From NCBI GenBank assembly GCA_026770705.1, contig JANJGN010000007.1, positions 108,934,001 through 108,998,000 on the forward strand: a stretch of 64,000 nt of DNA, in the 5' to 3' direction. This document shows, piece by piece, positions 3,881-62,244 of the stretch (positions are counted from its first letter, which is position 1; each line of letters starts with the position of its first letter). A program made the position numbers and the translations under genes. Below the pieces are notes generated by a model. The model was not told the DNA's origin and did no database searches. It saw only the letters and a program-made list of their open reading frames with translations. Source of the stretch: Isurus oxyrinchus (lineage: Eukaryota).

Positions 3881-6418
3881 ATGTCAGCGCGCACGGTTCT
3901 TCTGTGCCTGAATTTCCAAGGGGTCATTTGCACAGGTACCTGTCTATTGATTGCCCCATGTACTTTGAAGTTATGAAACGTTTCCAAACTAAGGTCCACA
4001 TTAACTTAGTGAATTGTAATTCCGCTTTGTAGCTTATACATTTGTTTCTCTTTTACTCCCCATGTCGTGTCTAATGCAAACTAGCCGGTAATTGATTATA
4101 TTTTCTGGCAATTGCGGATCACGCTTCATTCAGAGTGACTCAGGAGCCCAAACAAGAGTTTGTATCCAAAGGAGAAAACATAATTTTTTTCACCCGTTGT
4201 CTTGCTTGGGCAATGAAACCTGCCTCACATGGACCAAGTTCCTGGTTTTAACAGCAGATTACTAGTCACTGTCTATCTGTGTAGCAAATATGGAGCGCAC
4301 TATTTTCCCCTCAGGTTTACTTAGTTTTGTTTATTATGAATATTAAATAGTTAAGTCTGCTGAGTAGACGGAGTCTTGGACTTGATAACTCAGGTAAAAA
4401 TAAACAGATGCCAGTGTCTGTGAGACATGAGGATGACATATATTGCAGATGATTGGCAGAACGTTACAGGACAGGTGATTGCGCTTTGGAGTGGCGCTAT
4501 GATCATAAAATGCACCGCATTTAAAGCAGGATCAGATTTAACTTTTCCCTATGGAGCCCAATGACCCTAATTGGTTAATTTTCTATTTGGCAGTGCCTCC
4601 AAATCCTCTGAAGATGGTCTCCAAACCACCTGAAGGGAATTCAGATGTGTCTTTGACTCTTATGCGTGAAAGCATTTTATCCGGAGGATTTTACACTCAC
4701 ATGGTATAAAAATGGAGTGGAAATTGCAATAGGCAAACACAACATCAAAGTTAACACCGAAATTTCAAGCTCTTTGGCTCTTGTGGAACCTGTTCCAAGC
4801 GAAACCAATTTTATCTGCTCGGTACTTCATGCTTCTCTCCAGACTCCAGCTTTTGTCACTCATATTATTTTAAAATCTAACCAAGGTAAGAGGTGGGCGA
4901 AACACAAATGATAAGCAGGTACTGTTCAATTCATGTGATATGACGTATGCTTTGTACATGTTAATACTCGTGAAGTTACTTCACTGCCCTATCTTTGGAA
5001 ATAATAAAGAAAACAGTAAATTCACTAATTTATGCATTAAAAATAAAAGTGAACACCGTATATTTTAAAAACAATTTATATAATCTGGCAAGTAAATGTC
5101 CTCCATCAACAGTATTTATTTCCAATTTCTTTTGTTTAATGCGTAACAATTGTAATCACGAGCTTATCTTTTCCATTCCATTATATTGTCACACTTGTTC
5201 ACAGTTCAAGTATTTTGGTTTCTTGTTTCCCTGCTAAAATAGATTTAGTCTTTGCCAGTGCCTGTTCTCCCTCGAAATTCAACCAGTGTAGTTTCGTATC
5301 TTCCCCTGAACGCCGCACCTTATCTTCATACAATATTCTCATCCCCACCCCACTTCTATTGCAGGTATCGGAAATTATCCCCCTGTCTATCTTCTGCAAC
5401 TCTCGCCCCACTCTACCCCCTCCCCACTGGTGAAGTGCATTAAACCGCATGCCCATGCTCCGCCATCAACAAGATCAAGGCTGATCTAATTTTGATGTCA
5501 ACTCCGCTTTCCTGTCTGCCCCGATAACCCATGATCCCCCTGGCTAACAAAAATCTGCCTAACTCTGTCTTGAATAAATTCACTGAATCAGCCTCCACTT
5601 CTCTGGGGAAGAAAACGTCACATATTAGCAACACCCTGAGAGAAAAGGGATCTCCTCAGCACTATCTTAAAAGGGAGAGCTGTTCCTGTTAAACATTGCT
5701 CCATAATTCTAAACTCCCCCACAAGTGGAAACATCCTCCACACATCCACCTTGACAAATCACTGCAGGATCTTACAACTCTGAGTAAGATCACCTCTTAT
5801 TCTTCTAAGCGACAATATGTATTTGCTCAACCTGTTAAAATTTTCTCCATAAGTCCATTATCCCAGGAATGAGTCTCTGAACTGCTTCAAACGCAATTGT
5901 ACATTTTTTGTTGAAATATGAGACCAAAACTGCGCACACTATTCCGGACGAGGCCTCACCAATGAGCTGTACAGCTGCAGTAAAACCTGCTTACATTTAT
6001 GTTTCCATTCCGCTTGCAATAAAAGTCAACATTCGATCTGCCTTCCAAATAACTTGCGGTACCTGCACGCCAACTTTTTGGGAATCATGTGACTGGACAC
6101 CCAGGCCCCTCAGTACCAAAGAGTTTTGCAATTTCTCCATTCAAAGAACATACTGCTGGGATATAGTGGCCACAATGTGCTCATAAAGGCGTTTATGCAA
6201 ATCAAAATAAATTATTGTTTGTGTAATTGTTTTCCAGTTCAGGTCAATCTGCCCAATGTTTGGTCAGTGGTCTGTAACCTAGCGAAGACAATGAACTGGC
6301 CACATAACCATACAATTTCTTTCTTACCTATGCAGGAACAACAGCGGAGGTCGCGCATTATGCCACATTAGATTTTGGCAGAAGCAAAAACCGTCTAGGC
6401 TCAGGTAGGACTGAGTAA
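3881..6418 (+). pseudogene. IgSF receptor copy 1 pseudogene (leader 3881-3935; V remnant 4112-4190; C1 4594-4885; cytoplasmic exon 6336-6418)
   Basis: Leader MSARTVLLCLNFQGVICT with G|gtacc. The V acceptor is mutated AG>AA and V is truncated after VTQEPKQEFVSKGENIIF. C1 has Cys>Arg and a frameshift before AFYPEDFTLTWYKNG...FICSVLHASL, with donor G|gtaaga. The tail exon reads GTTAEVAHYATLDFGRSK. No TM exon was found. Confidence 0.85.
5440..6120 (-). mobile_element. CR1 LINE 3' fragment
   Basis: PREVEADSVNLFKTELGRFL C-terminus and a CR1-type 3' UTR. Confidence 0.8.
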
Positions 6419-7219
6419 CAGGTCAGAAAGAAAACATAGATCATATGTTTAGCATAAAGGATAATAAGAAACGAAGGGCATATATTTGAGCTAACGTCGG
6501 CTGTGTGTTGTACGTAAGGATATTTCCGCGACCTTCTGACAACTATTTGAGCATTAGCCCATGGGACTTGCAAAACTACCAAATTAACTTTATTTCTAAA
6601 TATTGAAATTACGGACTCAACAAGAAACAGCCCGAGTCGAACTCATGTACGCGACTCTTGCGATTGCTAATTTAGCGAAAAAGGGGAAATGCAGAAAAAC
6701 GAAATGAGCACAGTTTTCACAGCTGCAGAGAGAGAAAAAGGGCAGTAACTGAGGCATTCTATAACGACGCAAGAATCAATTGATAATTGGCATCTCTCTA
6801 CCATATCACGCCAGGCATGTATGTATCGTGCGATACCATCCTTCCGAGATGTAAGATAATTCCAATAATAGTTCAGGGAATGCAGTTGGTCGCAAGCAAT
6901 TAATGTTGAATTGTTTGATTAATTTTATTATAATTTCTTCTATTTACACTGCAGAGGTACGTTAATCACTTTGCTATATCTAATTATCATGCGTCTGTAA
7001 AGTCAGGAAAAATATACAATTTACGCCCATTTTTGGCGATTAATGCTGTAAAACCTATCTTTAGATTTATGTTTCGCGGTACTGCACTACGATTTCCAGT
7101 CAATGAACGCTGCTGTTGTGAAACGGGTCAGCTCAGTGCTATCAAATCGTCAATCAAAGCACTGAAAGTAGCTTCCAGGTGTTGTATGTCACCGAAAGCC
7201 ACATCTATCCACGTGGCCA

Positions 7220-19035: not shown

Positions 19036-19059
19036 GAGGGCACTACCCTGAGGAACCTG

Positions 19060-22050: not shown

Positions 22051-25000
22051 TGAAAAAGAAAGGAGAGCTGGTGAATTTCTTTGAATGTGTAAGGACATTA
22101 AAAAGAAACTCCTTTACCCAAAGATCTGCAACATGCCACTAAAGAGATTGGTTGAAACAAGTACTGAAGATGTATTTAAGGGGAATCTAGACAGGCATAT
22201 GAAGAGACATGAAATAGAGGGCCAGGATGATAGATTTAGATAAAGAGAAGCCGGAGTATGTTCAACTTGGGCACCAAAAGGGCCCTAATCAAGGCCCTGA
22301 ATTGCAATACAAGTGATTTTGACTATGATGGGCAACTTCAGATTGTTTGAGTTCTCAAGCTCTTTGTAACCTATGCCTTGATAAACGAATCCAACATTCT
22401 TCACTGATTCTGCTTCATTATGAGCGTGGTTACTCGTCAGCAAACAAAACTAACTGCAAGAGTTCGTCGATTATGCAATTAACTCTCACATAGTTCCTCT
22501 TACACCATGCTGTCCATAACACATGAGATTCTAGCATTTAAACAATTGCAGAAGTTACAAGACAACACTAAATAAAAGATAACTATTTTCAAAACCCGTA
22601 GTTACAGGATGTCAAACGTCATTCGGAAGATTCTTATCGAAAATTACGGAGAACTTTTGTTAGCAATTGCAAATATACAGTTATTGAAGAGAGTGATCAA
22701 TTCAAACAGGTGCTCAGAATGTCAGCGCGCATGGTCTGTGCCTGGCTCTCTAAGGGATCATTTGTACCATTCTATTAATTGCCCCAAGCACTTGTATTTA
22801 TAAAATGTTTCTGATGTAACGCACATTCACTTAGTGAACTGTAATTGGTGATGGTGTGCTCTTGAATGGGCCAGTTGCTGAAGGTTGACGAATGAACAGC
22901 TTCATTGAAAGTTTCACAGCAGAGTCTCCATGATATGACTCTGATCGCCAACGACCATCAAGCTTCCTTCGCCCAGACAGGGTTCAGATATTCACAGAGG
23001 CAATGTGAACGTCTATGGAGAATCCTCACTGCATGTCGTCATCATCCTCCTGGAAAATAGTGGCAGTTATGGCCTCTGCTCATCACCATGACCAGAGACT
23101 GAGCACTGAGGCTATGTGCACTGCCGTCAGCTACGCAGCAGTCAGACGTTCACAGATACGAATTGAGGATGTCAAGATTCTCCTTGCTGCATCTGGTCAT
23201 TATCCTCCATGAAGCCTGCGGCTATGAGAGCCTCCCGTGCGTGCCTACCTCGACTGGCCAGCGTGATGGCGTAATCGCCCACACCCGTTATTTCGAGAGC
23301 CTCATTACCATCATCCCCGTCGAAGTCCTTCTCATCGGAGGAGATGTGCAGCTCTTCCAACTCATCAGCCAAGTCCTTTCCACCGTGGCAGTGCCAAGTT
23401 AATTAGCACACAACAAGCTACGATGATGCATCATACCCACTGTGGACTTTATTGCAGTGCTCCATCGAACCTATCGCGGCCCCAGAACCTTGTTTTCAGG
23501 ATGCCGATTATTCGCACCACCAAAGTTCTGGTCACGCCATGAGCCTCATGATGCAATCGATCTGCTGCACTCTGAGGCCACCACACGGGCATCATCAGTC
23601 ACGGCCTCAGAAGGTAGTCTTTGTCCCCGGGAAGCCAACACTGCAGCCTCTGCGGATCCTGGAAGTAGTCAGTGATCTGAAATCACTAAAGATGCAGGAG
23701 CCGTGGATGGTGTTCCGTTTTCTAGGTTATATATTTTTTGTCTTTTACTTCCCCATGTCCTGCCTAATGCAGACAGCCTGCAATTGTCTATATTTCCTCA
23801 CAGCTGCGGGTCACGTTTCGTTAAGTGACTCAGAAGCCCAAACAGGAGATTGTATCCATAAGATAAAACTTTACCTTTGCCTGCAGGCTCTCCACCTTCC
23901 AGGACGATTTCTGTGTCGCAGTGCATTGGTGGAAACGGGTTGAGACTGAATGCCTGCGGGAAAGCGACAATGGCAGAAAGCGATTTAGCCTGAAGAGCAA
24001 ATGGTTGAGTAACTTCCAGTTGCTGAAGGCTACTTTCCAAGACTCTGGAGTCTATCATTGCGCAGTGGTATGTCAAGTAGTTGTTAAAGGAAATGATGTT
24101 GGATGACAGCTAATTGTTTATGGTAAGTCTGAAACACAGGAGAGTGGAATAATCGTAAAGATATCGAACACAAACGGGAATGTTCCGTGATTGTTTTATT
24201 GCACAGATTTGCCACCTTAAATGCCTGTTAACACACTTCGTGACAGGCTGTGCTGTATGGCCGTGTTCTCTGAATAGAAGTGCTACATTGTCACGCGCAG
24301 CATATTGTGTATCAATATTACTCAGTTAGGCTTGAGTTCCAACAGTAAGGTATACACCTTTTGTCTGATAGAGAATATAAATTCCAAAAATGTGCATGAA
24401 TGAAAACACTAATTCATTTAGCCTCCTCCGACACATGCTGGACTCTTAGCCCATTTTTGAAGAACAGAACGTTGTCACCTCACAAACCTCCAATAACGAA
24501 ACTTACAGAGGGAAGGTATTGCTGAAATCCCTGCGGTTTAACTTAATTTAAATTTTCAACACTTGCCTTGCTTCGGCAATGAAATCTGTTCCATATGGAC
24601 CAAGTCATTGATTTTAACAGCAGATTATTTGTCACTGTCTATCTGTGTAACGAATATAGTGCGCGCCAAGTGCCCCCCAGGTTTACTTAGTTTATTCGAT
24701 AATGAAAACTAAGTATTGAATATTAAAGGGTTGAGACTGGTCTGCTGAGTAAACGGAGTCTTGGACTTGGTAACTCAGGTAAAAATGAACAGATGCCAGT
24801 GTCTATGAGACATGTGGATGAAATATGTGGAGGTGATCGGCAGAACATTAAAAGGACACGCGATCGCGCTTTCGAATGGCGCTATTATCAGAAAATAAAC
24901 CGGATCTAAAGCAGGATCAGGTATAAATCCTTCCTATGAAGCCCGGTAACTCCAACTGTTTTATTTTCTATTTGATAGAGTCCCCAACCCCACTGAAGAT

Positions 25001-25220
25001 TCTCTCCAAAGCACTAGAAGGGGATTCAGATGTGTCTTCGACTCGTGTGAAACGGAGAATTTCACCCTAACCTGTTATAAAAATAGCGTGGAAATTGCAT
25101 TGGGCATACACAACATCAAAGTTTAGAATACCGAGGAATTCTCCTAAGTTTCAAGCTCTTTGGCTCAGGCGGAACCTGTTCCGAGCGAAACCAATTTTAC
25201 CTGAGTGGTGTCTCATGACT
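19603..25220 (+). repeat. Segmental duplication unit B, paralogous to 735-4835
   Basis: Same order and orientation of Harbinger transposase, Myb-like exon, CR1 tail fragment, promoter and IgSF exons. Confidence 0.85.
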
Positions 25221-25223
25221 TTA
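22719..25223 (+). pseudogene. IgSF receptor copy 2 pseudogene (leader 22719-~22765; V 23804-24122; C1 24979-~25223, truncated)
   Basis: The leader has indels and a TAA. The V exon (FAC...VHWWK...FQDSGVYHCAVV...G*QLIVY, G|gtaagt) has a frameshift and 2 stops. C1 has stops and deletions and is cut off by an L2 3' end. Confidence 0.88.
22847..23712 (-). mobile_element. Internal Harbinger transposase fragment inserted in intron 1 of IgSF copy 2
   Basis: Near-copy of 19745-20585. It interrupts intron sequence gtaatt|ccg that is contiguous in copy 1 (~4016-4024). No TIRs. Confidence 0.9.
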
Positions 25224-25224
25224 G

Positions 25225-25720
25225 GCTTTTCTATTCCAATGCACGGCTGCACAGCCTTATACATTCAAACCTTTCGAACCTTGTGGTCATCCTAACCTCT
25301 GCTGGGCCTGTCATAATTTGCCTTGATTTTAGAATTCTCCAACTGAACGTCAAATTCGTTCACCGTCGCTCTGCTCAGTACATCTGTAACTTGCCTCAGC
25401 CTGCAAAATTCTGAAATAACAGCACTCCACTAATCCTGGCCTCTTCAGCAGCCCAGGCTTCAATCGATCCATGATTGGAAACCATAGGTCAGCTGCCGTG
25501 ACACTGAGCTTTACAATTGCATTTCTGAACTGCTGCAACTCTATTTCTACCTCTAAGACAATCGATAAAATGCGATTCTCTAATGCTCAAAAAATAATCA
25601 TCAGGCCTAATATCTCTTTATGTATTTCGGTGTGAGATTCTGTTTGAAAATATTCCCGTGAATCGCCTTGGGTTAATTCAGTACATTAAGCACGCTATAC
25701 AAATGCACGTTGTTATAGTT
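25225..25720 (+). mobile_element. L2 LINE 3' end (truncates the C1 exon of copy 2)
   Basis: L2-type tail gtgaatcgccttggg...cgctatacaaatgcacgttgtt. Confidence 0.6.
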
Positions 25721-26700: not shown

Positions 26701-26719
26701 GCTTTTGTATTCACAATAT

Positions 26720-28610: not shown

Positions 28611-28614
28611 GCAC

Positions 28615-34635: not shown

Positions 34636-35699
34636 CTTTCAATGATCGTATGTTGGTGATTTTGCAAAAGCCTTATTTTTATGAATGAGCAATCAGGGAA
34701 GAATTAGTAGAAATGGAGCGAGGTCATATCTAACTGTATGTGTTAAGTGTGAAGTAAAGAGATGAATTGTCATCAAGCACAACAAATTAATATTCACCAA
34801 TTATCACAGTGATTGAGCAAAACAACAGTCAGGTTATCCACGGACGGAATAAGCAAAATAACTCTGTGTGGACTTATTTATTAGAAGCTAATTACATGTA
34901 ATTTTTAAAAAAATTGTACTTAATATTCTGAAATAAATCTATAGATTGACCATAAATGACCGTCAGTCAAATCAGTAACCGAAATGGGAATATTTCAAGA
35001 AGCTAAGCAAATATTAGGCAATGGTTTGTATTCTACTTGATAATACACAACGGTTAGATTGTTACATTTACAATGAAACGCAAAGCACAAAATTGCGTTC
35101 TCTAATGCCTACAATGAATGCAACACAATGGAACGGTCCAGATGCTGAGCATTGCTATATTGTGTGAGTATTCACCAATCACATATAGCTCAAAAAATCC
35201 ACTATTTTTCAACTAGTTGTTGCACCGAACATCTGAGGATGAACATTGCGGCACATGTTTCAAATATATTAACGATGAACCAATACAATCGATTCCATTA
35301 ATGCACGATTGCGTCGCTTGTCGAATGCGGTTTGATTCTACACACTTCTAATTTTTTTGGGTCGATCCCAGCCATTGCCATTGAAGTTCAAATGTTTGCT
35401 TTCTTATCTTTCTTAACATTGCGATGGGTCAACAGTAGGTAGCTGTAATTGAAACGGAATAATTCAAAGCCTAGAGTTAACTCAGAGCGTGAATTGTGAA
35501 GCAGTTGAATCTGAACGCAAACTGATGATGAGCTCTGGCGATGATATGGAGACGCATTAAGTGACAAGATGCTCTGGCCTGAAATTGTACTCTGAAAAGG
35601 GATTTTAGTTTAAAAAGCCCCGATTCCTCCTCTCATCACCCGCCCTTAATAAAAAAGGTGCTTTTTGACATTTGATTTCTCCCTTTATATGTGGTGGCT

Positions 35700-38700: not shown

Positions 38701-40369
38701 TCCGTGACATTACAAATCAAAACAACCTTCAATAGTTGCAAATTACGCGCAATAATTTTCCAGTTCTCCGTTACATAGCTGCCTCAGCTACACGGAAAAT
38801 TGTCTCCAGGACACCCCAGAGCAATTCACCTGCGTCTCTGCCTTTTGTATGTGAAACAACTCAGTTGCCCTCTTGAATTCTACCGTTTTCACTTGCACTG
38901 TTAAGAATTTCAACGCCGATGCGTGGACGATGTGTCAATAGCTCCAACTAACTAATGTTTACTTCTGAACTTTAATTTGGTCGATGTTAATTCTGCTTCT
39001 CTCTCTTCGATGCTACAAGTCCTGCTGAGTATTTTCATCATTTTCTGTTTACGTTAGGTCAAAACGAAATTCTTACTGCGGCAACTTCAGCAGTGTGCCT
39101 GCAACGCTCAAAAATATAAGCAGCGATCAGAGTTGCAACAGTAAAATACCCCAAATCCAATCAGAACGCAAATTATAATTGATAGAATCGCAGCGCAGGT
39201 GAGGCTACTAAACTATGCTGTCTACTGGACCTCTCTGATATCATTTGCTATGATTTCCGTGGTTTATTTCCAACGTTAATGAATAAATATCCTAGAACTC
39301 CATATCTAAGAGCGTGGTTGGAGGACATTAATCATTTGGACTGCAGCCTTTGAAAAGAAAACGCGCTATATCTTCTCAGGGCAACTAGAGAGGGGCAACA
39401 AATAGCATTGCTGTGAGAGGCGCTAACACTGCAGACGTGAATTAAGAACTGCATATCAAACTTACTTGTGAATTTCATTATAGTCTCTGCCTCTGCAGCC
39501 AACAATGCTAAGGTACTTGGTGTCTCGACGGTTCTTGAAGGAGAAAGCTGTCTCTTAATCAAGTTTTGCAATTCTAATAGTTAATTTCCCAGTCCACACT
39601 GAATACACAGATATCCCAATATCACTATTCAATGTTATTCCATCTTTTTCGTAATTTGGCTGCAAATTTCTCATGTATCTCCTCTCATTGATATTTTATC
39701 TAATAATATCCACTCAGCGGCGTGATGGCCCCTCAATTTTTCTTTAATTCTATCCTAGATGATTCTGTCCATGAGCCTGAAATTGCATGCACCCTTTCTA
39801 ACTCGGTTACAGTGTCTGTTTTGAGTATTGAAACCAAGCCATTTCATCTGCCTCCTTCGATTTCCTGAATATGTTGTGGCCTAGAATGCTAAGTGCCACT
39901 TCCACAGTTCAGTCAGAGCTCCGTTATTTTCATTATTTGATCATCCCAAGTGACTGCTACTTCCTCCAGCTCACCAATTTAAATACCAGAGAGTTGCACT
40001 AAGTTTCCTGGATTTGCAATTGGGAATAGTGCACACTTTTAAGCATCTAATTTGGAAATCTGTTCATGAAAAACATGGCTTAGGACGAAATGAGCTTAGT
40101 GAAAGTAATTAGCTAATTGTATCCCATCATGTTTATAACATTGGTGTGCTCACCTCCTCACGTGCATGACAGCATTTCACAAACAAGTGGTGTAACCATC
40201 CAAGTTCATATCTGTCTGCGCAAAGGGATGCTTTGCAGAACCTCAATGTTCTCTTCCACAATCACACACTAAAATGTAATTGTAATGGATAAAAATAGCA
40301 CCCCAGCGTTTGCTGCCGCTCCATGTTAATCATATGCAAGAACGTTCTTCTCTTAAAGATAAGTTTAAA

Positions 40370-44585: not shown

Positions 44586-44589
44586 TTAT

Positions 44590-52662: not shown

Positions 52663-52724
52663 AAACCGCATTTAGTGGATGTTGAATGTCATTGGGACGT
52701 ACCTCACAGGAAACAAACCGAAAA
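52663..52724 (+). promoter_or_regulatory. Conserved proximal promoter block of the IgSF paralogs
   Basis: AAACC..A.TTA..GGATGT..A..GTCATT lies ~100-115 nt upstream of each ATG (3768-3800, 22591-22624, 52663-52693). It contains ETS-like GGATGT, RUNX-like AACCGCA and CRE-half-like elements. Confidence 0.45.
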
Positions 52725-52787
52725 CCATTATTAACAGTTCTGAACTTGCAGTTACTGTAGTGTCATCAATTGAATCCTCTGTTCAGT

Positions 52788-52842
52788 ATGTCAGCGAGGA
52801 TAGCTTTTCTTTGCCTGATTCTCCGTGGCATTATTCATAAAG
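52788..52842 (+). CDS. Copy 3 exon 1, signal peptide MSARIAFLCLILRGIIHK(A)
   Basis: ATG, hydrophobic core and phase-1 donor G|gtacgt. Homologous to the leaders at 3881 and 22719. Confidence 0.85.
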
Positions 52843-55800
52843 GTACGTCTTTATTCATTGACTCAGCTGCTTTAATTTATAGAATGCTTTCGGAGCTCCA
52901 ACACATTGAGCGAATTATTCGTAATTCCCCTATCTGGTTAAATGCTTCTCTTCTCGTTCTTTATGTCACATCTGATACAATTACGTTCTACTTGATTATA
53001 TTCCTCACAGCCTCGGACGACACTTCATCCAGTGTAACTCAAACGCCTCGAGAAGTGACTGTAATTAATGGGAGGGACATTACCTTCTACTGCACGTTCC
53101 CCCTCTCTCAGCACCATTCTTTGGTAAAAGTAAATTGGTGGAAGCAGGATGAGAATGAATACCTTCACACAAGGGGCAGTCGTAGAAGGCGATTTGGCGT
53201 GGAAAATGAAAACAGGGCTTTCTTTCAGTTGTTGGCCGCAACATTCCAAGGCTCTGGAGTTTCTCTCTGCGCAGTGGTCCGTCAAGGAATAGGCCTAAGA
53301 AATGGTACCGGATCTAATCTAATTGTGCATGGTAAGTCTGGAATATTGGAGAGCGAGAATATCGTAAATATATCGAACATAACAAACAGGAATTTTTTGT
53401 GATTGCTTATTTCATCGATTTTGGCGGAATAATCATGACTATTCATACTGTGCACGATAACCTAAATTACATATGCACGCTTTCTTAAAGAATTAACGAA
53501 TCGCCATTCGATGTCATTTGCAGGGTGCTGCAAGCTACATACATGTTAACCTATTAGATTATAAATCCAAAGCCAGTTTATAAACCAGATTATTATCGCG
53601 CAATTTTCGATCATATGAATTCCTGAAAATCGTTTAAATTATGCACGGCTCATAGACTATTTTTAATGTCCTGGCTACCTACTTCGTTCTCTCAGCGATT
53701 GAACATTCCTGAAATTAATTTCCATGTTATGTTTGGATCGCTGAGTTGAGAATCAGTGTACAACGAACCGTTATATGTGGAACATAAGAACTAATAGCTG
53801 AAGTAGGCAATTCAGCCCCTAGAGCCTGCGGCGTCATTCAATACTTTCATGGATGATCTCATTTCGGCCTCAGTTCCAATTTCCCGCCCTCGTCCCGTAC
53901 CCTTTCAACCTGTTACCAATTAGAAATCTGTATACCTCTCCTTAAATTTATTCAGCGCCCCGGTATCCACTGCACTCGGAGGTAGTGAATTCCACAGATT
54001 CACGACCCTTTGAGAAATGCAATTCCTCCTTATCTCTGATTTAACTCTACCACGCCTTAGCCTAATGCAATGGCCTCTCGTTCTAGAATGCCCCAGAAGG
54101 GGAAACATCCGCTCCACATCCCCTTTCGCATCTGATAAACCTTAATTAGATCTCCTCTCATCCTTCTAAACTCTAACGAGTATACGCCTAAACTGCTCAA
54201 TCTCTCCTCATAAACAAGCCCCGCATCTCTGGAATCATTCCAGTGAACATCCTCTGAACCGCCTCCAACGGGACTACATCCTTTCTCACGTAAGGGGACT
54301 AAAACAGTGCACAGTACTCCAGGTGCTGTCTCGCCAATGCCTTGTATAGTTGCAACAACCCTGCACTATGTTTATACTTTATTCCTTTAGCAATAAATGC
54401 CAAAATTCCACTTGCCTTCCTTATTACCTGCTGTACCTGCATACTAGATTTCAGCAATTCATGCAAGAGGATATTGAGATCGTTCTGCACTGAAGCATTC
54501 TGAAGTTTCTCTCCATTTAAATATAAGTCGCCTTTTTATTCTACCGACCAAAATGGATAACCTCAGACCCTTCCACGTTAAACTCCAAATTTTGGCCATT
54601 TCAGCTAACCTGCCCATATCCATTTGTAAATTGTTTATTTCTTCATGGCAAAGTAATTTCCCACCTATTTTGGTGTCATCTGCAAAGTTAGTATAGTGTC
54701 TTACATCCCTCAATCAAAGCCATTAATATAGATTTTAAGTAGTTGGGGCCCAGGGACAGAACCCTTTGGTGCCCCACTAGTAACAGCTTGCCATCCATTA
54801 AAATACTCATTTATCCAGATCATCTGCTTTTTGTTGGATAACCAATCCTCTATCGAAGCTATTATATTGTGATCTTAACTTGTGCATTAACCTTTTGTGC
54901 GCACCTGATCAAAGGCCTTCTGGAAGTCCTGATATTCTACATCCCATTATCTACTTTGCTTGTCACATCTTCAAAGAACTCTAGCAAATTAGGAAAGCAC
55001 GATTTACTCTTCATAAAACCATGCTGACACTGATTGATTGCATTTTGACTTTCAAAATGACCCAACACTACTTCTTTAATAGTGGATTCCAACAATTCCC
55101 CAAAGACAGACGTTAAACTATTTGGTCTATAGCTTCCTACTTTCTGCCCAGCCCCCGCCCCCGCTTTTTTTTGGAATGAGGGCGTTACATTAGCCTTTTC
55201 ACAATCCACTGGAACCATTCCAGAATCCAGGGAATTTTAGAATATTATAGCCAATACAACCATATTCTCCCTGCCACTTCTTTTAAGACCTTGGGATGTA
55301 GGCCATCAGGCCCTGTAGACTTGTCACCCAGGAAAATACAAATAGTTTGCTGAGTACTTTTTCTCTAGTGATGGTGATTGTTCTAAGTTCCTCCTTCTCT
55401 ATACTTTCTGCAATCCCTGTGCTAAGGAACATGCAACTTGAAGCACGGCGCGTTATAAAATCAATGTCGTGGGAAAAAAACAACACAGGTAAATTGCGCA
55501 AGCGAAAGCTCTTGTGGTTGAACCGAATTGCATTTATTTCTTCCATTGCAATGTTTCGACTGCGAAATCTGTCTGACACCAACTAAGTCCCCATTTTATC
55601 ATCAACAACGAGCAGTTTGATTGCCACGGACTATTGATTCTTAACAAATACAAGCGACTCCAAGCGCAGAGTTGCCTCCTCCACATACACCCCGTAGACA
55701 CACGCCCCTCACCCCACTGCCCACAACACCCCACCCCACCACCAAAGTTGATTTGTTTACTTCCTTGGATAATGTCCCCAAACATTGATAATGTTGCGAC

Positions 55801-58800
55801 CTCTCTGCCGAGCAACTCAAATATTTACTTCCGATGCTGCCCATTAACTCGTCTTTGTTTATTCTTCGTTCTGCAGTTGCTCCAGTCCCACTCAATTTTG
55901 TCTCCCGGTTCCATGACGTAAATTCTTCGGCTTCTTTGACACTCCTGTGTAAAACAGCTGCATTTTACCTGGAGAATTTGAAAGTCATTTGGTATAAAAA
56001 TAACGCCGAAACTACCTTTGGAATACACACAAGTAAAATACAGAACAATGACGGATTGTATGAAGTTTCCAGCTCTTTGGTTGAGACGCAGCAACTCCTG
56101 AGTGATACTAAGTATAGCTGTTCAGTATCTCATGTCTCCCTCAAGACTCCAGCTGTCGTCGTCCACACTATTTCTAAATTCAATCAAGTTACAAGGTCAA
56201 CAATTGAAAAAGGTGAGTCAGCGACATTTAAGTCGGCAAATAGATATAACGTGGAAGTGCTACTTATTAATAATAATGAAGCTAGTCCACATTAATCTCA
56301 TATTAAATACCAACGAAATCGTGGAATTCATGTATAATATTAATTGGGTCCATGTATTGCAAAATTGGTCAAGCCTTATTTGCGTGCAAATTCCTTCATT
56401 TAACACATGAAAATTACAAACGGGAGTGATCTGTTCTATCCCTTTTCCACCTCGCATTGTTAAGAATTATTCAGTTTCGTTTACTCCCATGTTGAAACCG
56501 TTCTATCCTTAACTAGTGCCTGCTTTCCTTGCACCGTCACTATTGCTAAGGAACTGCACCCATATTGTTTTCACTCGAGATTCTCCCACTGCAGCTGGCG
56601 ATTCTGACTCTGTTTTGGTTACACCCAGTGCAGAATTCTGAGATTAACCCATTTGACAACTTTTAACCTTTACCCCTCTACGGCATGTTTAATTGGCACC
56701 TATCTCATAAACCTCATTTAAACTTTGCCCGCAACTTGGCTAGAGTGCAGCTGATTCATTGCATCTTGTAAACATCCTTTACCCCGCGAAACAATAATTA
56801 ATAAACTTTCGTCTTTAGGTCACCTTTGTTGTTCGCTTTGATAAACATAATTCATTTAATTGGAAATGGGACTCCCAACCGATTGCTACAACCCAGAATT
56901 TTGTGAAACCAGCGAAGAAGCACTTGTCAAAAAAGTCAAGAACAAGAAAAAATATTTTGGTTATGTTTTCTGCCTCTCCTAAAACAGTGTTCACAAGGAT
57001 CAAGTACTGGGGCATCAACTTTTTTACAATGTATTTGAATGACTTGGATGAGGGGGCCGAAGATGTGGTTCCTAGATGTGGTTTCTAAGTTTTTTGAATG
57101 CACACAGGCAGGAAAGTAAGTTTTGAAAAAAACATAAGGAGGCTACAAAGGGATATAGACAGGTGAAGTGAGTGGGCCAACACCTGGAAAATGGAGCATT
57201 ATGTGGGAAATGTGAAATTGTGCATTTTGGCAGAACCAATTAAAAAGAAGCATAGTATCTAAATATTGCAGAGGTCGAAGATGCAGAGGGATCTGGATGT
57301 CCTAGTGCATGAATCTCAATACCTTAGTGTGGAGATAATGCATACAATTAGTGAAGGGGATAGAATGTTATCGTTTAATGCGTGGGGAATTGAATACGAT
57401 AGTAAAGAGGTTTTGCTAAAGTTGTACAGGGCACTGGTGAGGCCACATCTGGGTTACTGTGTACATTATTAATGTCCTTATTGAAGGAAGGATGCAAATG
57501 CATTGGGAGCAGTTAGCGAAGGTTTACTGCAATTACCTGGAATTGGGGGGCTGTCCTGTGAGGAAAGGCTGGACACACTAAACAAGAGGCTTGTATCCGC
57601 TGGTATTTAGAAACATAAGTGGCGACTTGATTGAAACATATAAGATCCTGCGGGGTCTTGACAGGGTGGATGTGGATAGGACATTTCCTCCTGTGGGGGA
57701 ATAGAAAATTAGCTGTGAATGTTTTAAAATAAGTGGTCTCCCATTTAACACAGAGATGAATGTTTTTTCCCCTCACAGAAGATAGAGTGTCTCTGAAGCT
57801 ATCTTCCTCAAATGGAGGTCGAAGCAAGCCTTTCAAAAAATTTTAAGGCAGAGCTAGATACATTCTTGATAAGCAAGGGGTGAAAGATTATCCGTGGAAG
57901 GAGGGAATATGGAGTTGAGGTTACAGTCAAATCAGCCATGATCTTATTGAATGGCGGAACAGATTCTAGGAGTCAAGTGGCCTACCTTTGTTCCTAATTC
58001 GTATGTCCGTATGAATGGTTATTCGTGATTTGTGATCCATAAACTGAAAGTTTCGCTCGCACATTAACTCAGAATGCATCATCTATTTGATGAAGAAGTT
58101 ACTTCAATATTTGTAGTATAAATAATATTTGGTATTTAAACATTAGAATTGCTGACAAAAGAGACATATCTTGCTCTCATCAGAAGAACATTGGTAAGAA
58201 TACCAAATAAAGGGGGGAAACAACATTTTATACTTTATGAGAGAGTGTGGTGATCGGTTTGAAAGTGGCGTTGCCATGGAGAATGCACAACTGATGGTGA
58301 CTGACATTTAACTTCCAAGCATTATTTGAAACTTAAACCAGGCAGCTTGAACCCGATTTTTCAAAGCATTGCCCTGAGGATGTGGCAGCGAATGGCCGCC
58401 ACTTATCTTGTTTGGTGAAACAGCCGCAAAGTACGTACATGTTATTTCTGTCTACAACGAACAGGACTCTGTGTATTAACGTATTTAGCTTCCAGTACTT
58501 GCAAATGCGCCGCACTGCAAGCGCGACTGACAATGTTAAATTGGTTGTCACAGAAATTCATAGCAAATTGAGGATTATTATGCAAATGTTGTCCAATCCC
58601 AGAAACACATCTAATGTTGGATAAAAACAAAAAAACTGCAGATGCTGGAAATCCAAAACAAAAACAGAATTACCTCGACAAACTCAGCAGGTCTGGCAGC
58701 ATCAGCGGAGAAGAAGAGATTTGACGTTTCGAGTCCTCATGACCCTTCAACAGAACTGATGTTGGATACTGTGTTTTGGGTTTCGCGAGCACAGGCTGAT

Positions 58801-61800
58801 TGGGTATAGTCTGTACCTTGCCCGTTGTGAACAGCGACTAGAGTATGCTGTTTGAGACAATCCACCAGCCTTTGGGACATTCAGTCTATATACCTAGGAT
58901 CACACTAGCACTGACATTCATACACGACATTACTCATTTGTGTGATGGGCAGAACGTCTTTTTGGCTTGATGACAGCATCCTTTTATTGGCGAATGCCAC
59001 TCGTGTTGCTATTACATAGCAGCTACGGGAAACAGCTAGCTTCACCTGTTGCTCAAATTTTTGAATTACTTTGCCCTTCCATAATGATCTGAGGTAGACT
59101 GGGCACATTTCAGGGCCGATAGTGATGGCCTTAGGCTAGTTCATGAGTTTGTGTGATACACACAGCGAAATTATCTGGTCAGGGTAGCAATTGACCTGCA
59201 GGATGCATTAGATGCGTCCTATTTCAGATTCAAGTTTATATGGTGAGGAAATGTCTCGGGCCCTATTTACAAGGTTGCCAATAAAACCAATCTTATAGTG
59301 TGTGGAACTGTAAGAATCCCAACGCGTATATTGACCTGTAAAGGTAGGTTTACGGTAGACTGTGGTAGAGAACCCCCTGGAAGATTTCTCAACTAGGACT
59401 TCAAGAAAAGGGAGTTCATGTGACTGTTCCATTTCATGGACGAATTTCAGCGCTAGATACAGCCCATTAAAACATGAAAGGAAATTGTTACATGCAGCTC
59501 TGTATTTAAATATAGCAAACGTCTCATCCACATATCGGAAATATGCGAGGGGTAGGAAGACAGGTGTCATTGCATCGAAGACACGTTTCTCAAGAAACAG
59601 ATAAAGGTGTTTGCGAGAGCTGGGCCTAGAGGGGATCCCACAGCAGCACATTATATTTGGTCATACATTATGTCATTAAAACTGAACTCAACTGCGCGAT
59701 TTGCCGATTTCATAAGTTCAATGAATATTGAATCACGCAATGGTGAGCGGACTAGATGATACAGTGCTGCAGCGGAAATATTTATGGCTTCCTTAAGTCG
59801 TAAAAAGGCTAGCAATATCAAATGAGCATATGGGGACATCATTGCTATCGTTATGCAAGTCCTGCATGGCTTTCGCAAATGTGAAGGAACCCTTCACTGT
59901 GTATATGGAAAACTTGGTCAAAAGTGGTTGTAACAGTTCACCCAACCATTTGGTCAATTCATGTTGCACAGAACTGGGCATAGAAAGGATGGGGCGTAGA
60001 GGGACATCGCTTTTTATGTGTCTTGGGCAGCCCATACATACGTGGACAAAGATGACTGTGAGGACGAACCCAGTCATATGTATCACGTGGTAGCTCATCG
60101 CTCTTGCACAACGAAAACAAGTTTTCAGCTTACTTTCGAGTAAGGCTGTCAGGTAATGTTGCGCGTCAGATCCAATGGATGCAAATTTGGAACAGTTACT
60201 AGGAATGGCGTGCATTTTGCTGATATAGTCACGCTTGTTGAGGATGACTATTCTAGTCAGGTTTACTGATGTCTATGTCCGGGCTGGTCTTAAGAGCTCG
60301 CAACGCTGTAAGAAAGTCGCGTCGCAAGCTTAGGCCTGTCTCTTTTTTCAGCAATGTTCCAGTTCTACGCTACCAAAGAGCTATGTATTTAAACTTTCTT
60401 ACTGCCGTTCAATACCACGGTTTTATTGAAAGCATCGTCATAGATTAAGCAGTAAACTATCTTGAGATCTATGTTTACGCAACGCCAGCCAAAACGTAAT
60501 GTTCCTCTTAATATGGCAGACAATATCCATAATGCTGTCGCCTTCTGAGCCCCAGTTTGTGCAATAGCGGGACTGGCGTTTCTCGTGTTAGTGCTTGTCA
60601 CTGGAACGCGCCGCCGACTTCAGAATAATGACGGTAAGATCTACTGTTAATATTAGTGTTTACGGCAAACCTCAGGACACCAGGTAACATGGAAGGCGGT
60701 GGTAGTGGTGGCAAGATAATTCGAGCAGCAGTTATATTGAAAACAGTGTAGTTTCTTTTTCGGGAAGCTCGGATGGATGTCAACGCGTTTTTTAACGCCG
60801 AAATGCTCACAGTTCGGAATCAACATGGAAAATAATTTCGCGGGGAGAAAGTTCCAGCAGAAATTTCCTCATGGCAACATGATAAATAAAATGGAACCTG
60901 ACAGGCAATCATTTTCCAACTTATTCTGTTATCGATACTCAACTAGTTGAGGTTGGTCTTTTGAAGATTCCGCCCGGGAATTGTTCTGTACTTAGGAACG
61001 TGAGAAACAGGGAACAGGTCAGCCCTAAGAACCTCTTGCCTGTACCGCCAAGCAGTAAGTTCGTTGCTGAGCTTCTAACTCAAAAGTGTTATTACCATAA
61101 AATTGATTCACATCAACAAAGTCTTAAAAGTCACACGGACTCGAAACGTTAACCGTATTCCTCTCCGCAGATGCAGTCAGACCTGCTGAGTTTTTCCAGG
61201 TATTTTTTTTACCTGTTTTTCTTTTGGTTTGCAGCATCTGCAGTTTTTTGCTTTGAACTTTATTCTCTTGTTGTCTACAAAGATGTCCTTATTTTCCGAA
61301 AAACATCTAAAATAAAATCAATGCTGAGCGCGACAAATGCCGGGATTTTAACACTGCCGGCAAAGTCAAAAATTTATCTTATTTTCGACACTAGGCAAGC
61401 CGTCTCAATCTCTGTCATAGGAATTGAGTAAATAATTCAAGCATTCAAAGTCAACTTTCACTCGTTTCCAGGTAAAAAAGAACGTGCAACGGGGCCGAGC
61501 CGCCATGAGGAATTGGTGAGTTCATTCATTCATCCGGACAGGTGATTGGGATGACAAGAAAGATTAATGTAATGAAAGAAAATCACAATCGCGTCAGAAC
61601 AGCGTAAATCTACTAATTGAAGACTATTTATTCGGCGTCAGTGAGTTCTTCAAATCGAGGTTAGAATTAAACTTGGCAACAATTGCGTTACTGGGCAAGA
61701 GTGTTAATTGGATAAAAGAAAAACTGCTCATTTCTGTGAAAATACGCCTAAGTAATTAAGTCTACAGTTTAGCTCATTCCTTAGATTTGAAAATAAGTTT

Positions 61801-62244
61801 GCCTAAAACTCCGCTCATTTAAACAACTCTGCAACTTTGTGTTGGAGAATGAACATTAAGAAGCTTAAATATTAGTTATAGTGATCATCGTGCATTAATA
61901 TTGTATTCAGATAAATATATATGAATTATGGGTTCTGCAATTGATTTCGAGCCTGGAGCAATCGGCGCAATGTTTCATTATTTGCACTAAGACTGGTGAA
62001 GGGAAAGAATTAGCCACTTGACCAAACCTTTTGCTTCTGGTCTTTGCAGGGAGCAGCCGCTGAGACTGTGTGCTATGCTGCATGGAAATTCAGCAGAGCT
62101 GGGAAAACTACAGGACATAAACGTGAAGAGGAGAGAAGCATGTGCGTTCAGGTAGCTCTGAGCAACAGATGCAGAATCATAGATGATCAGGGTAACATCA
62201 ACATTCATGAGATAAAGGAAGGCATTTTCTTTTGTTGGCTTTGA
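52788..62244 (+). CDS. IgSF receptor gene copy 3 (leader-V(J)-C1-TM-cyt-cyt; SIRP/NKp30/VJ-C1-like), 6 exons, in-frame TGA before the TM helix
   Basis: Exons are 52788-52842, 53011-53331, 55877-56212, 60520-60633, 61472-61515 and 62050-62244. All have AG/GT boundaries with compatible phases (1,1,1,1,0). They total 1065 nt, giving 354 aa if the TGA at 60546 were read through and 246 aa up to that stop. Confidence 0.8.
53011..53331 (+). CDS. Copy 3 exon 2, V-set Ig domain with germline-encoded J-like G strand
   Basis: Acceptor ttcctcacag|. Translates as VTQTP...ITFYC...VNWWK...FQLL...GSGVSLC...NGTGSNLIVH. Donor G|gtaagt. Confidence 0.9.
53780..55410 (-). mobile_element. CR1 LINE remnant in the V-C1 intron of copy 3
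   Basis: CQHGFMKSKSCFPNLLEFFEDV, NFADDTKIGG, LYKALARQHLEYC and SQRVVNLWNSLP. Confidence 0.9.
55877..56212 (+). CDS. Copy 3 exon 3, C1-set Ig domain
   Basis: Acceptor ctgcag|. C1 signatures LTLLC..AFYL...VIWYKN, NNDGLYEVSSSL and YSCSVSHVSL. Donor AAG|gtgagt at 56213. Confidence 0.9.
56990..58010 (+). mobile_element. CR1 LINE 3' fragment in the C1-TM intron
   Basis: QRDLDVLVHES, LYRALVRPHLGYCV and a CR1 3' UTR. Confidence 0.88.
58128..60377 (-). mobile_element. Penelope-like element (RT + GIY-YIG) with inverted terminal pLTR fragment
   Basis: PLRPILSM, CSFDIASLFT, YFRYVDETF, LPFLEVLV, TTVYRKPTFTGQY and MSNVVYECQC. Inverted repeat at 58148-58166 / 60337-60355. Confidence 0.9.
58624..58758 (-). 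mobile_element. Hammerhead-ribozyme-bearing short insertion nested in the Penelope element
   Basis: 10-bp TSD ATGTTGGATA (58614-58623 / 58759-58768). The minus strand reads AGUU-CUGUUGA-A-GGGUC-AUGAG-GACUC-GAAA-CGUC-AAAU. Confidence 0.75.
60520..60633 (+). CDS. Copy 3 exon 4, stalk/transmembrane exon with premature TGA (60546-60548)
   Basis: gcag| then DNIHNAVAF*APVCAIAGLAFLVLVLVTGTRRRLQNND, then G|gtaaga. Phase 1-1, with an uncharged hydrophobic helix followed by an RRR stop-transfer signal. Confidence 0.8.
61126..61252 (+). mobile_element. Truncated copy of the same HHR-type short repeat
   Basis: agtcacacggactcgaaacgttaac...cagatgc..cagacctgctgagtttttccagg. The CUGANGA core is missing. 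Confidence 0.65.
61472..61515 (+). CDS. Copy 3 exon 5, short cytoplasmic exon GKKERATGPSRHEEL
   Basis: Pyrimidine tract ctcgtttccag| and donor TTG|gtgagt. Phase 1 to 0 links exon 4 to exon 6 exactly. Confidence 0.65.
62050..62244 (+). CDS. Copy 3 exon 6, terminal cytoplasmic exon with degenerate ITIM-like motifs (VCYAAW; SMCVQV)
   Basis: tctttgcag| then GAAAETVCYAAWKFSRAGK...TGA. Aligns with 6336-6418 of copy 1. Confidence 0.7.
   Translation, partial: GAAAETVCYAAWKFSRAGKTTGHKREEERSMCVQVALSNRCRIIDDQGNINIHEIKEGIFFCWL

What the first reader, a model, noticed from the sequence alone, without database searches (positions are those of the whole stretch)
3881..62244. Tandem family of non-rearranging VJ-C1 immune receptors with ITIM-type tails in a probable shark genome
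Seen: three same-strand paralogs. Their V exon encodes its own J-like G strand (NGTGSNLIV, i.e. GxG-S/T-x-L-x-V) with no RSS, followed by a true C1-set exon (YxCxVxHxSL), a neutral TM and a Tyr-motif tail. Known: C1 domains are largely restricted to Ig, TCR, MHC, tapasin, SIRP and B7-H6. Germline-joined VJ + C1 receptors (SIRP-like, PRARP/VJC1-type) resemble the proposed pre-RAG antigen-receptor ancestor. Inference: this is part of an expanding, probably poorly described chondrichthyan NK/myeloid inhibitory-receptor cluster evolving by birth and death.
Basis: partly seen in the sequence, partly recalled or inferred. Interest (0 to 1): 0.8.

Follow-up and report, generated by a model that had tools for sequence, protein, structure and literature searches.

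The report
Decayed shark SIRP-like VJ-C1 receptor copies
This stretch of shark DNA holds two dead copies, one small relic and one recently damaged copy of an unstudied shark, ray and chimaera family of antibody-shaped "brake" receptors that need no gene rearrangement; the family is real, but this window shows its graveyard, not a working gene.

Summary
The three same-strand paralogs are real. All belong to one elasmobranch subclade of a cartilaginous-fish family: leader, germline-joined VJ domain, one C1 domain, neutral membrane anchor, and a tail of ITIM/ITSM-like tyrosine units. Public annotations list the family only under inconsistent automatic names (SIRP-alpha-like, tapasin-related-like, NCR3LG1-like, lambda-light-chain-like). 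I found no paper on it.

No RSS occurs anywhere in the window.

None of the three copies is demonstrably functional:
- Copy 1 has a truncated V, a frameshift and stops.
- Copy 2 has three stops in V and a broken C1.
- Copy 3 has open V and C1 exons with consensus splice sites. It has lost the family-invariant Asp, the near-invariant Tyr of DSGxYxC and the Pro of FYP. It carries TGG>TGA just before the TM helix. Its tail motifs are degenerate (VCYAAW; Tyr>Cys).

DNA contigs of a roughly 97% identical relative keep the Asp and Tyr but carry a 4-bp deletion in the V exon. Two lineages therefore carry independent lesions. No RNA evidence was found.

Sequence and fold place the family equally near Ig light chains and SIRP-alpha; PRARP membership could not be tested.

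This scan has found the same family many times elsewhere in this genome.

The parts
3881..3934 (+). Copy 1 leader exon (MSARTVLLCLNFQGVICT)
   Evidence: tblastn to P0111 leader; frame reading
4102..4221 (+). Copy 1 V-exon remnant. Only the first ~30 residues (ADHASFRVTQEPKQEFVSKGENIIFF) are recognisable; it then diverges and hits a stop.
4575..4893 (+). Copy 1 C1 exon, a pseudo-exon. The A/B strands and the rest lie in different frames, there is a stop (MCL*LLC), and 5 residues (EGLYE) are deleted.
   Evidence: Pfam C1-set 24.8 bits on 4657-4908
6329..6790 (+). Copy 1 cytoplasmic relics: GTTAEVAHYATLDFGRSK...*, ELMYATL...K*AQFSQLQ, and VTEAFYNDARIN* in another frame. They contain stops and a frameshift.
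23777..24124 (+). Copy 2 V exon, a pseudo-exon with three in-frame stops. The J motif is broken (NDVG*QLIVY).
24930..25318 (+). Copy 2 C1 exon, a pseudo-exon with AAFYP deleted and several stops.
34694..34744 (+). Relic 4: end of a V exon (QGRISRNGARSYLTVCV)
38763..38867 (+). Relic 4: start of a C1 exon (KIVSRTPQSNSPASLPFVCET), then a stop.
52788..52842 (+). Copy 3 leader exon (MSARIAFLCLILRGIIHK), phase-1 GT donor.
53011..53331 (+). Copy 3 VJ exon. It is open, with a CAG acceptor and a GTAAGT donor, and its J-like strand NGTGSNLIV lies in the same exon. The hallmarks are altered: FQGSGVSLC instead of FQDSGVYxC.
55877..56212 (+). Copy 3 C1-set exon. It is open and contains YSCSVSH. FYP has become FYL.
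60520..60633 (+). Copy 3 stalk/TM exon (DNIHNAVAF*APVCAIAGLAFLVLVLVTGTRRRLQNNDG). The TGA at 60546-60548 aligns with a Trp of the relatives. A weak in-phase alternative acceptor (GAG) sits at 60547-60549.
61472..61515 (+). Copy 3 cytoplasmic exon 1 (GKKERATGPSRHEEL), with an AG acceptor and a GTGAGT donor.
62050..62244 (+). Copy 3 cytoplasmic exon 2 (GAAAETVCYAAWKFSRAGKTTGHKREEERSMCVQ). A possible donor follows 62151; read-through reaches the stop at 62242-62244.
62311..62460 (+). Degenerate third tail unit (KLQNDKLIIYPNIGF...). No in-phase AG acceptor precedes it.
   Evidence: compared with the P0112 tail
53700..55500 (.). High-copy repeat (transposon debris) in the V-C1 intron of copy 3.
   Evidence: contig depth above 1e5; repeat matches
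56900..58700 (.). High-copy repeats in the C1-TM intron of copy 3.

Best explanation
The window is a decaying stretch of a large, single-chromosome gene cluster. The cluster encodes a cartilaginous-fish family of type I membrane receptors.

Family architecture: split leader, a V domain whose J-like G strand (GxG) is encoded in the same exon so that no rearrangement is needed, one C1-set domain, a short stalk, a neutral glycine-rich TM helix, and a tail of repeated units. Each tail unit carries an ITIM (L/VxYAxL) and a TxYAxI/V or RTVYAQ motif.

By analogy with SIRP-alpha and other ITIM receptors, working members would be tyrosine-phosphorylated after ligand binding and would recruit SH2 phosphatases to damp cell activation. 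Short-tailed members with an Arg in the TM would be the activating partners. Both steps are inferred, not shown.

In this window:
- Copies 1 and 2 and a fourth relic are plain pseudogenes.
- Copy 3 still has open, correctly spliced-looking V and C1 exons but is most likely a recently disabled gene.
- It has lost the invariant Asp and the tyrosine-corner Tyr of the V domain and the Pro of FYP in C1.
- It has a TGG>TGA nonsense codon 85 nt upstream of the next exon junction. That predicts nonsense-mediated decay, or at best a soluble V-C1 product.
- Its tail motifs no longer fit ITIM/ITSM.
For: Family:
- phmmer of the copy-3 V exon against 1.84 billion representatives gave only 88 hits. Every V-C1 hit whose name and taxon I looked up (20 of the 88) is from sharks, rays or Callorhinchus.
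- A profile of 33 members found 39 proteins. All are chondrichthyan except one bird TAPBPL at 61 bits.
- All 33 members score both V-set and C1-set.
- 50 of 69 models have a TM. Of those 50, 29 have at least one ITIM, and about 9 have a TM Arg; most of these have short tails, and two still carry an ITIM-type match.

Placement of the copies:
- V and C1 trees place them in an elasmobranch subclade; the V clade has SH-aLRT 95.
- The copies are 41-48% identical to each other but 52-68% identical to proteins of other shark species.

Lesions:
- Stops and frameshifts in copies 1 and 2.
- Copy 3 deviates at 4 of 32 conserved columns, including invariant D97. Its nearest kin deviate at 0.
- The TGA aligns with Trp of P0112, P0111 and P0109.
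- The tail reads VCYAAW and RSMCVQ.

Relative's DNA:
- DNA contigs about 97% identical, from three studies, keep Asp (53251) and Tyr (53263) but have a 4-bp deletion at 53103 in the V exon.
- In those contigs the exons differ from the window at least as much as the introns do.

No RSS was found.
Against: - Copy 3's V and C1 exons are fully open with consensus splice sites.
- Four deviations at conserved columns lie within the range seen among annotated members (0-6).
- An in-phase AG at 60548-60549 would skip the TGA and keep the TM. The Heterodontus model P0001, copy 3's nearest relative, starts its TM exon at just that position and also lacks tail tyrosines. The lineage may therefore be a living stalk-less, ITIM-less variant.
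- Absence of RNA evidence means little here, because no RNA run of this species was served.
- The table of differences was truncated, and the contigs may come from another species or a paralog.
- In run X1 part of the depth at 53103 lacks the 4-bp deletion.
Confidence: 0.7

Rival explanations
1. Copy 3 is a living gene. Either the downstream acceptor at 60549 is used and yields a membrane receptor with a short stalk and a non-signalling tail (a decoy or co-receptor), or the TGA is used and yields a secreted V-C1 protein.
For: - The leader, V, C1, TM and first cytoplasmic exons are open, with good splice sites.
- The alternative AG is in phase.
- P0001 of Heterodontus has the same short junction (…TVQ|IVCAVVGL) and a tail without tyrosine motifs. 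It deviates at none of the conserved ectodomain columns.
Against: - The alternative acceptor is GAG, the least favoured context, while the upstream CAG acceptor is intact.
- The invariant Asp and the tyrosine-corner Tyr were both lost within about 3% of DNA divergence.
- The relative's copy has a 4-bp frameshift.
- A stop 85 nt before an exon junction predicts nonsense-mediated decay (established rule).
- No RNA holder was found.
Confidence: 0.25
2. The family is simply the cartilaginous-fish ortholog group of SIRP (SIRP-alpha/beta), so nothing here lies outside a named family.
For: - Automatic names are mostly 'tyrosine-protein phosphatase non-receptor type substrate 1-like'.
- The ESM Atlas nearest clusters to P0012 are SIRP-alpha, at 0.97.
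- The family profile aligns to SIRP-alpha d1-d2 at 68.8 bits.
- The family pairs ITIM-tailed members with TM-Arg members.
Against: - There is one C1 domain, not two.
- The same profile scores lambda light chain at 69.6 bits and kappa at 67.2 bits.
- Foldseek ranks light chains, TCR beta and B7-H6 first.
- No bony-vertebrate SIRP appeared among the 88 or the 39 sequence hits.
- Synteny was not tested.
Confidence: 0.25
3. The copies are germline-joined Ig light-chain or TCR genes or pseudogenes.
For: Light-chain-like fold and profile scores. Some members are auto-named 'immunoglobulin lambda-1 light chain-like'.
Against: - A TM exon and a long tyrosine-motif tail are present in the family and in copy 3.
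- There is no RSS and no separate J or C cluster.
- The V-domain search recovered only this family plus turtle multi-V receptors, and no IgL or TCR.
Confidence: 0.02

Closest known systems
SIRP family (SIRP-alpha/beta/gamma; PDB 2wng, 4i2x)
   Same: - Non-rearranging V domain with a J-like GxG strand, followed by a C1-set domain.
- Type I membrane protein.
- Inhibitory members have ITIM-type tyrosines; partner members have a basic TM residue and a short tail.
- Profile match of 68.8 bits over V+C1; Atlas neighbours at 0.97.
   Different: - One C1 domain instead of two.
- The tail is built of repeated LTYAAL/TEYAxI units.
- No SIRP of bony vertebrates was recovered by sequence search.
- The family scores equally near Ig light chains.
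- Ligand (CD47?) and synteny are unknown.
[quoted passage not shown] 2019, cited in PMC10751288 and PMC11599192)
   Same: By those citations and my own recollection of the abstract (untested): non-rearranging VJ + single C1 + TM + cytoplasmic tail genes of non-mammalian vertebrates.
   Different: No PRARP sequence or paper was available here, so homology, tail motifs and linkage could not be compared. PRARP was not reported from cartilaginous fish in the texts I could read.
Ig light chains and TCR chains
   Same: V(J)-C1 two-domain shape. Best Foldseek hits E about 4e-15. Lambda 69.6 bits and kappa 67.2 bits.
   Different: No RSS and no rearrangement. The family has its own TM and signalling tail. 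The TM is neutral, unlike TCR chains.
UrIg / UrIg2 of elasmobranchs (PMC12227049; PDB 9dmx)
   Same: Non-rearranging VJ exon with a split leader, followed by C1 domains, in the same animals. Profile match of 58.9 bits over V-C1.
   Different: UrIg2 has nine C domains and an Fc-like dimer. This family has one C1 and an ITIM tail. Its match to UrIg2 is weaker than its match to IgL or SIRP.
B7-H6 / NKp30 (MHC-linked VJ genes)
   Same: B7-H6 is V + C1 and gave the best TM-score by target, 0.67. Some members are auto-named NCR3LG1-like.
   Different: NKp30 has V only. B7-H6 lacks the J-like GxG-type receptor V and the ITIM repeat tail. The V exon matched NKp30 only at E 0.21.

Membership tests
Unnamed chondrichthyan VJ-C1-TM tyrosine-tail family (auto-named SIRP-alpha-like, TAPBPL-like, NCR3LG1-like or IgL-lambda-like) | V and C1 domains group with family members in sequence searches and trees. 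| tested here: met
   Copy-3 V is 61% identical and its C1 65-68% identical to P0001/P0112. Copy-2 V is 53% and copy-1 C1 56% identical to P0112. Trees; the V clade has SH-aLRT 95.
Unnamed chondrichthyan VJ-C1-TM tyrosine-tail family | Exon plan: leader / VJ / C1 / stalk+TM / tail units, with phase-1 junctions in the ectodomain. | tested here: met
   Copy 3 shows this plan. Copies 1 and 2 show it only in part.
Unnamed chondrichthyan VJ-C1-TM tyrosine-tail family | Intact family invariants (W59, D97, C103, G115, G117, P126, C148, S189, C205, V207, H209) and intact tail tyrosine motifs. | tested here: not met
   Copy 3 has D97G, Y101S, P155L and G63D, a TGA before the TM and a tail reading VCYAAW / RSMCVQ. 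Copies 1 and 2 have stops.
SIRP | N-terminal V domain with a J-like motif. | tested here: met
   NGTGSNLIV is in the V exon. The GxG is invariant in the family.
SIRP | Two C1-set domains after the V domain. | tested here: not met
   There is a single C1 exon between V and TM. Family proteins have one C1.
SIRP | Sequence groups with SIRP rather than with other V-C1 proteins. | tested here: inconclusive
   SIRP-alpha scores 68.8 bits, lambda 69.6 and kappa 67.2. No tree with SIRP could be built because no SIRP sequence was in hand.
SIRP | Orthologous locus / CD47 binding / SHP-1/2 recruitment. | not testable with these tools
PRARP | Non-rearranging VJ + one C1 + TM + cytoplasmic tail. | tested here: met
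   The architecture is as above. This is a resemblance only.
PRARP | Sequence orthology to chicken PRARP genes and their linkage group. | not testable with these tools
   The paper is not held. No PRARP sequence was returned by any search.
Rearranging Ig light chain / TCR | V and J segments separated and flanked by RSS. | tested here: not met
   V and J lie in one exon. No RSS occurs in 64 kb.
UrIg / UrIg2 | VJ followed by several C1-type domains (nine in UrIg2). | tested here: not met
   The family has one C1. PMC12227049. The profile match is weaker than to IgL or SIRP.
Pfam C1-set (PF07654) and V-set (PF07686) | Score above the gathering threshold. | tested here: met
   Copy-3 C1 scores 43.6 bits against a cut-off of 21. 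Its V scores 26.4 against 26, which is borderline. Copy-1 C1 scores 24.8 bits.

The most novel reading that the evidence does not exclude
The family is neither SIRP nor PRARP. It is a separate, ancient non-rearranging lineage standing as close to Ig light chains and TCR chains as to SIRP. That would make it a surviving relative of the kind of VJ-C1 membrane receptor gene that the RAG transposon split, and sharks, rays and chimaeras would have kept and expanded it into a paired inhibitory/activating system. Within it, the copy-3/P0001 lineage would be a conserved stalk-less, ITIM-less variant rather than a pseudogene.
Probability: 0.1. Interest if true: 0.7.

Novelty: new member of a known kind. 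Interest (0 to 1): 0.3.

Why it matters
Non-rearranging V(J)-C1 receptors bear on how antibodies and T-cell receptors arose. A large, unstudied family of them in the oldest jawed vertebrates is worth a proper description: phylogeny against SIRP, PRARP, UrIg and IgL/TCR, ligands, expressing cells, and inhibitory/activating pairing. This window adds only the decay side. It documents old paralog lineages dying in place, and one copy caught shortly after inactivation, which supports birth-and-death evolution of the cluster. It offers no working gene for experiments; intact members such as P0109, P0012 or P0004 are better starting points.

Tried and rejected
- The word-based protein search with the V exon was blank. 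This was a sensitivity limit, not absence; the exhaustive search found 88 hits.
- The ESM Atlas would not take the window's own exon. I used the stored homologue P0012 instead.
I therefore could not read the P0001 locus to see whether the TGA is shared, nor test synteny or linkage to an MHC paralogon.
- The search for sequencing runs found no RNA holder. The contigs laid are DNA of a roughly 97% identical relative and cover only 52700-58699. The TM exon and tail could not be compared, and no splice junction was seen.
- PRARP: the Fu et al. 2019 and Ohta et al. 2019 papers are not held, and UrIg 2023 is not held. Membership stays untested.
- No tree with SIRP, PRARP, NKp30, B7-H6, IgL or TCR could be built, because no tool returned those sequences as stored proteins and I did not type sequences from memory or from PDB alignments.
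- A Pfam scan of ten long ORFs between the copies gave nothing. They are most likely degraded transposon frames.
- The idea of a conserved membrane-proximal Cys as an interchain disulfide was rejected as a family feature, since it is present in only 15 of 33 members.
The joined protein was never built or searched.


Full report
**What is in the sequence.** A six-frame scan and tblastn of the copy-3 exons against the window found three + strand sets of Ig-like exons. tblastn with public family proteins refined these sets and added tail exons and a fourth relic.

Copy 3 has the full plan:
- Leader 52788-52842, ending in a phase-1 GT donor.
- VJ exon 53011-53331. It has a CAG acceptor and a GTAAGT donor, and the J-like strand NGTGSNLIV lies inside the same exon.
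- C1 exon 55877-56212.
- Stalk/TM exon 60520-60633.
- A small cytoplasmic exon 61472-61515.
- A tail exon from 62050.

Pfam scores the copy-3 C1 exon as C1-set (E 3.8e-11, 43.6 bits against a cut-off of 21). It scores the V exon just above the V-set threshold, 26.4 against 26. No RSS heptamer lies in or next to any copy, and no heptamer-spacer-nonamer exists in the 64 kb. The core observation therefore holds: same-strand paralogs, V with its own J strand, no RSS, and a true C1 domain.

**State of the copies.**
- Copy 1 keeps a leader (3881-3934) and about 30 residues of V (4102-4221).
- Its C1 exon (4575-4893) is split between two frames, has a stop and lacks five residues.
- Its tail relics (6329-6790) still show AHYATL, LMYATL and VTEAFYNDARIN, but with stops and a frameshift.
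- No TM exon is recognisable for copy 1.
- Copy 2's V (23777-24124) has three stops and a broken GxG.
- Its C1 (24930-25318) lacks AAFYP and has stops, and no TM or tail was found.
- A fourth copy survives only as the end of a V exon (34694-34744) and the start of a C1 exon (38763-38867).

Within the window the copies are 41-48% identical in protein. Each is 52-68% identical to proteins of other shark species. These are therefore old lineages, not recent duplicates.

**The family.**
- An exhaustive phmmer search of the copy-3 V exon against 1.84 billion cluster representatives found only 88 proteins at E<=0.001.
- Every V-C1 hit whose name and taxon I looked up (20 of the 88) comes from sharks, rays or the chimaera Callorhinchus.
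- The sharks are Mustelus, Scyliorhinus, Heterodontus, Heptranchias, Stegostoma, Chiloscyllium and Cetorhinus. The rays are Hypanus, Hemitrygon and Mobula.
- Their names are automatic and inconsistent: SIRP-alpha-like, SIRP-beta-1-like, tapasin-related-like, NCR3LG1-like, lambda light chain-like and CD276 homolog.
- In each species the members lie on one chromosome-scale contig.
- An alignment of 33 members (A1) shows invariant W59, D97, C103, G115, G117, P126, C148, S189, C205, V207 and H209.
- All 33 members score both V-set and C1-set.
- Full-length members read leader-VJ-C1-stalk-TM-tail. The tail repeats units such as ...VTYAALDLSGSKK...TEYAEI or ...ERTVYAQ.
- Of 69 V-C1 models, 50 have a TM helix. 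Of those 50, 29 have at least one canonical ITIM.
- About nine of the 50 have an Arg in the TM helix. Most of these have short tails, though two still carry an ITIM-type match. This is the pattern of paired inhibitory and activating receptors.
- An AlphaFold2 model of P0012 gives two confident beta-sandwich domains, a TM helix and a disordered tail.
- Trees of the C1 and V domains put the window's copies in one elasmobranch subclade. It contains P0001 and P0112 (Heterodontus), P0004 (Mustelus), P0005 (Scyliorhinus), P0109 and P0111 (Heptranchias) and ray proteins. The V clade has SH-aLRT 95.

**Is copy 3 alive?** Several independent signs say probably not.
1. Conserved columns. Copy 3 deviates at four of the 32 columns conserved in at least 85% of the family: G63D, the invariant D97G, Y101S and P155L.
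   - Its closest relatives deviate at none, although the family range is 0-6.
   - By established knowledge of Ig domains, D97 and Y101 are the Asp and the tyrosine-corner Tyr of DSGxYxC, and P155 is the Pro of the C1 FYP motif.
2. Nonsense codon. The stalk/TM exon reads DNIHNAVAF*APVCAIAGL. The TGA (60546-60548) aligns with the Trp of DSVHNSFSFWTAVCAVAGL in P0112 and of its Heptranchias relatives, so it is a TGG>TGA change.
   - The stop lies 85 nt upstream of the next exon junction. By the usual 50-55 nt rule this predicts nonsense-mediated decay, or at most a soluble V-C1 product.
3. Tail motifs. The tail aligns with GATAEVMHYAAINLSRTSKTPRHKREE of P0112 but reads GAAAETVCYAAWKFSRAGKTTGHKREEERSMCVQ.
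   - The +3 position of the first motif is Trp, and the Tyr of RTVYAQ is Cys.
   - The next unit (KLQNDKLIIYPNIGF, 62311-62460) has no in-phase acceptor.
4. A close relative. No RNA run held the locus. Six runs of unrecorded type held 31% of its words, and I laid three of them. Their contigs run through the introns, so they are DNA, and they are about 97% identical to the window. That fits a close relative or another population.
   - Those contigs read Asp at 53251 and Tyr at 53263, so the window's G and S are recent. They also keep His in GSHLIV and Pro in ETQP, the usual family residues.
   - The same contigs carry a 4-bp deletion at 53103 inside the V exon.
   - Their exons differ from the window at least as much as the flanking introns do: about 3% against 2-3%, from a truncated table.
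   - Independent lesions in two lineages, with no excess conservation of exons, are what a gene free of constraint shows.

**Counter-evidence for copy 3.**
- An AG at 60548-60549 is in phase and would give A-P-V-C-A-I..., skipping the TGA.
- The Heterodontus model P0001, copy 3's nearest relative, starts its TM exon at exactly that point (...TVQ|IVCAVVGL). It also has no tail tyrosine motif, yet keeps a flawless ectodomain.
- The alternative site is a GAG acceptor, which is weak.
- I put the chance that copy 3 is non-functional at about two in three.

**What the family works like, and what it is.**
- Its design matches SIRP-type paired receptors: a VJ-type V domain, a C1 domain, and either ITIM tails or a basic TM residue. 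The ESM Atlas puts P0012 nearest SIRP-alpha clusters at 0.97.
- Membership is a different matter, because SIRPs have two C1 domains and this family has one.
- The family profile matches the V+C1 stretch of a lambda light chain at 69.6 bits. It matches SIRP-alpha d1-d2 at 68.8, a kappa chain at 67.2 and UrIg2 at 58.9.
- Foldseek ranks light chains, a TCR beta chain and B7-H6 first, all near E 1e-14.
- No bony-vertebrate SIRP, IgL or TCR appeared in the sequence searches. The only non-chondrichthyan hits were turtle multi-V receptors without C1 and one bird TAPBPL.
- UrIg2 has nine C domains (PMC12227049), so it is a different gene.
- PRARP is cited as a VJ gene family in PMC10751288 and PMC11599192. 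By my recollection it shares the one-C1 plan, but neither its paper nor any sequence was available, so that assignment is untested.
- Literature searches for this family in cartilaginous fish found nothing.

**Relation to the rest of the scan.**
- Earlier notes on this genome describe the same family on this chromosome, from about 12 Mb upstream to about 1 Mb downstream, and on other pieces. I treated them as leads only.
- Two notes concern this window directly: the TGA before the TM (s1-871756) and the disabled tail tyrosines (s1-868764). I checked both and they hold.

**Limits.**
- The spliced copy-3 protein was never joined or searched.
- Read laying covered only 52700-58699, used contigs rather than reads, and its difference table was cut.
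- The species could not be named. 'Shark' rests on the nearest proteins being elasmobranch.

**Verdict.** The window, however, holds two dead copies, one relic and one probably dead copy of a family that is already present, unnamed, in public annotations.

Noticed in passing
window 34694-34744 and 38763-38867 (+): A fourth, almost wholly deleted copy of the same family lies between copies 2 and 3. It consists of the end of a V exon (QGRISRNGARSYLTVCV) and the first ~25 residues of a C1 exon (KIVSRTPQSNSPASLPFVCET).
   Followed up: partly
window 53103, 53251, 53263 (copy-3 V exon), seen in runs X1, X2, X4: DNA contigs about 97% identical to the window, from three studies, carry a 4-bp deletion in the V exon. 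They keep the canonical Asp and Tyr that the window has lost. In X1 part of the depth lacks the deletion, so it may be polymorphic there.
   Followed up: partly
proteins P0008, P0038, P0045, P0063, P0067, P0081, P0085 (turtles: Chelonia, Malaclemys, Trachemys): The V-domain search also hit turtle receptors made of 2-6 tandem VJ-type domains without any C1. They have a TM and VTYxDL/VVYxEV tails and are auto-named NCAM2, FCRL5-like or titin-like. They may be a separate unstudied VJ receptor family.
   Followed up: no
proteins P0003, P0007, P0040, P0080, P0119 and isoforms: Some family members in sharks, rays and Callorhinchus have an Arg inside the TM helix, mostly with a short tail. This is the hallmark of activating partners that need an adaptor.
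   Followed up: partly
protein P0001 (Heterodontus francisci, XP model) versus window 60520-60633: The nearest public relative of copy 3 begins its TM exon exactly where copy 3 has an in-phase alternative AG downstream of the TGA, and it also lacks tail tyrosines. The stop may be older than the species split and bypassed by splicing.
   Followed up: no
window 53700-55500, 56900-58700, 59200-60270: The introns of copy 3 are packed with very high-copy repeats (contig depth above 1e5) and with reverse-transcriptase-like frames on the minus strand. Ten long ORFs sampled across the window, three of them from these introns, gave no Pfam match at E 0.01.
   Followed up: partly
PDB entry 2rcj chain C (search output): The chain labelled 'IgA1 heavy chain' aligns over its first ~210 residues like a lambda light chain (…[53 protein letters not shown]…). 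Its top rank therefore reflects light-chain similarity, not heavy-chain similarity.
   Followed up: no
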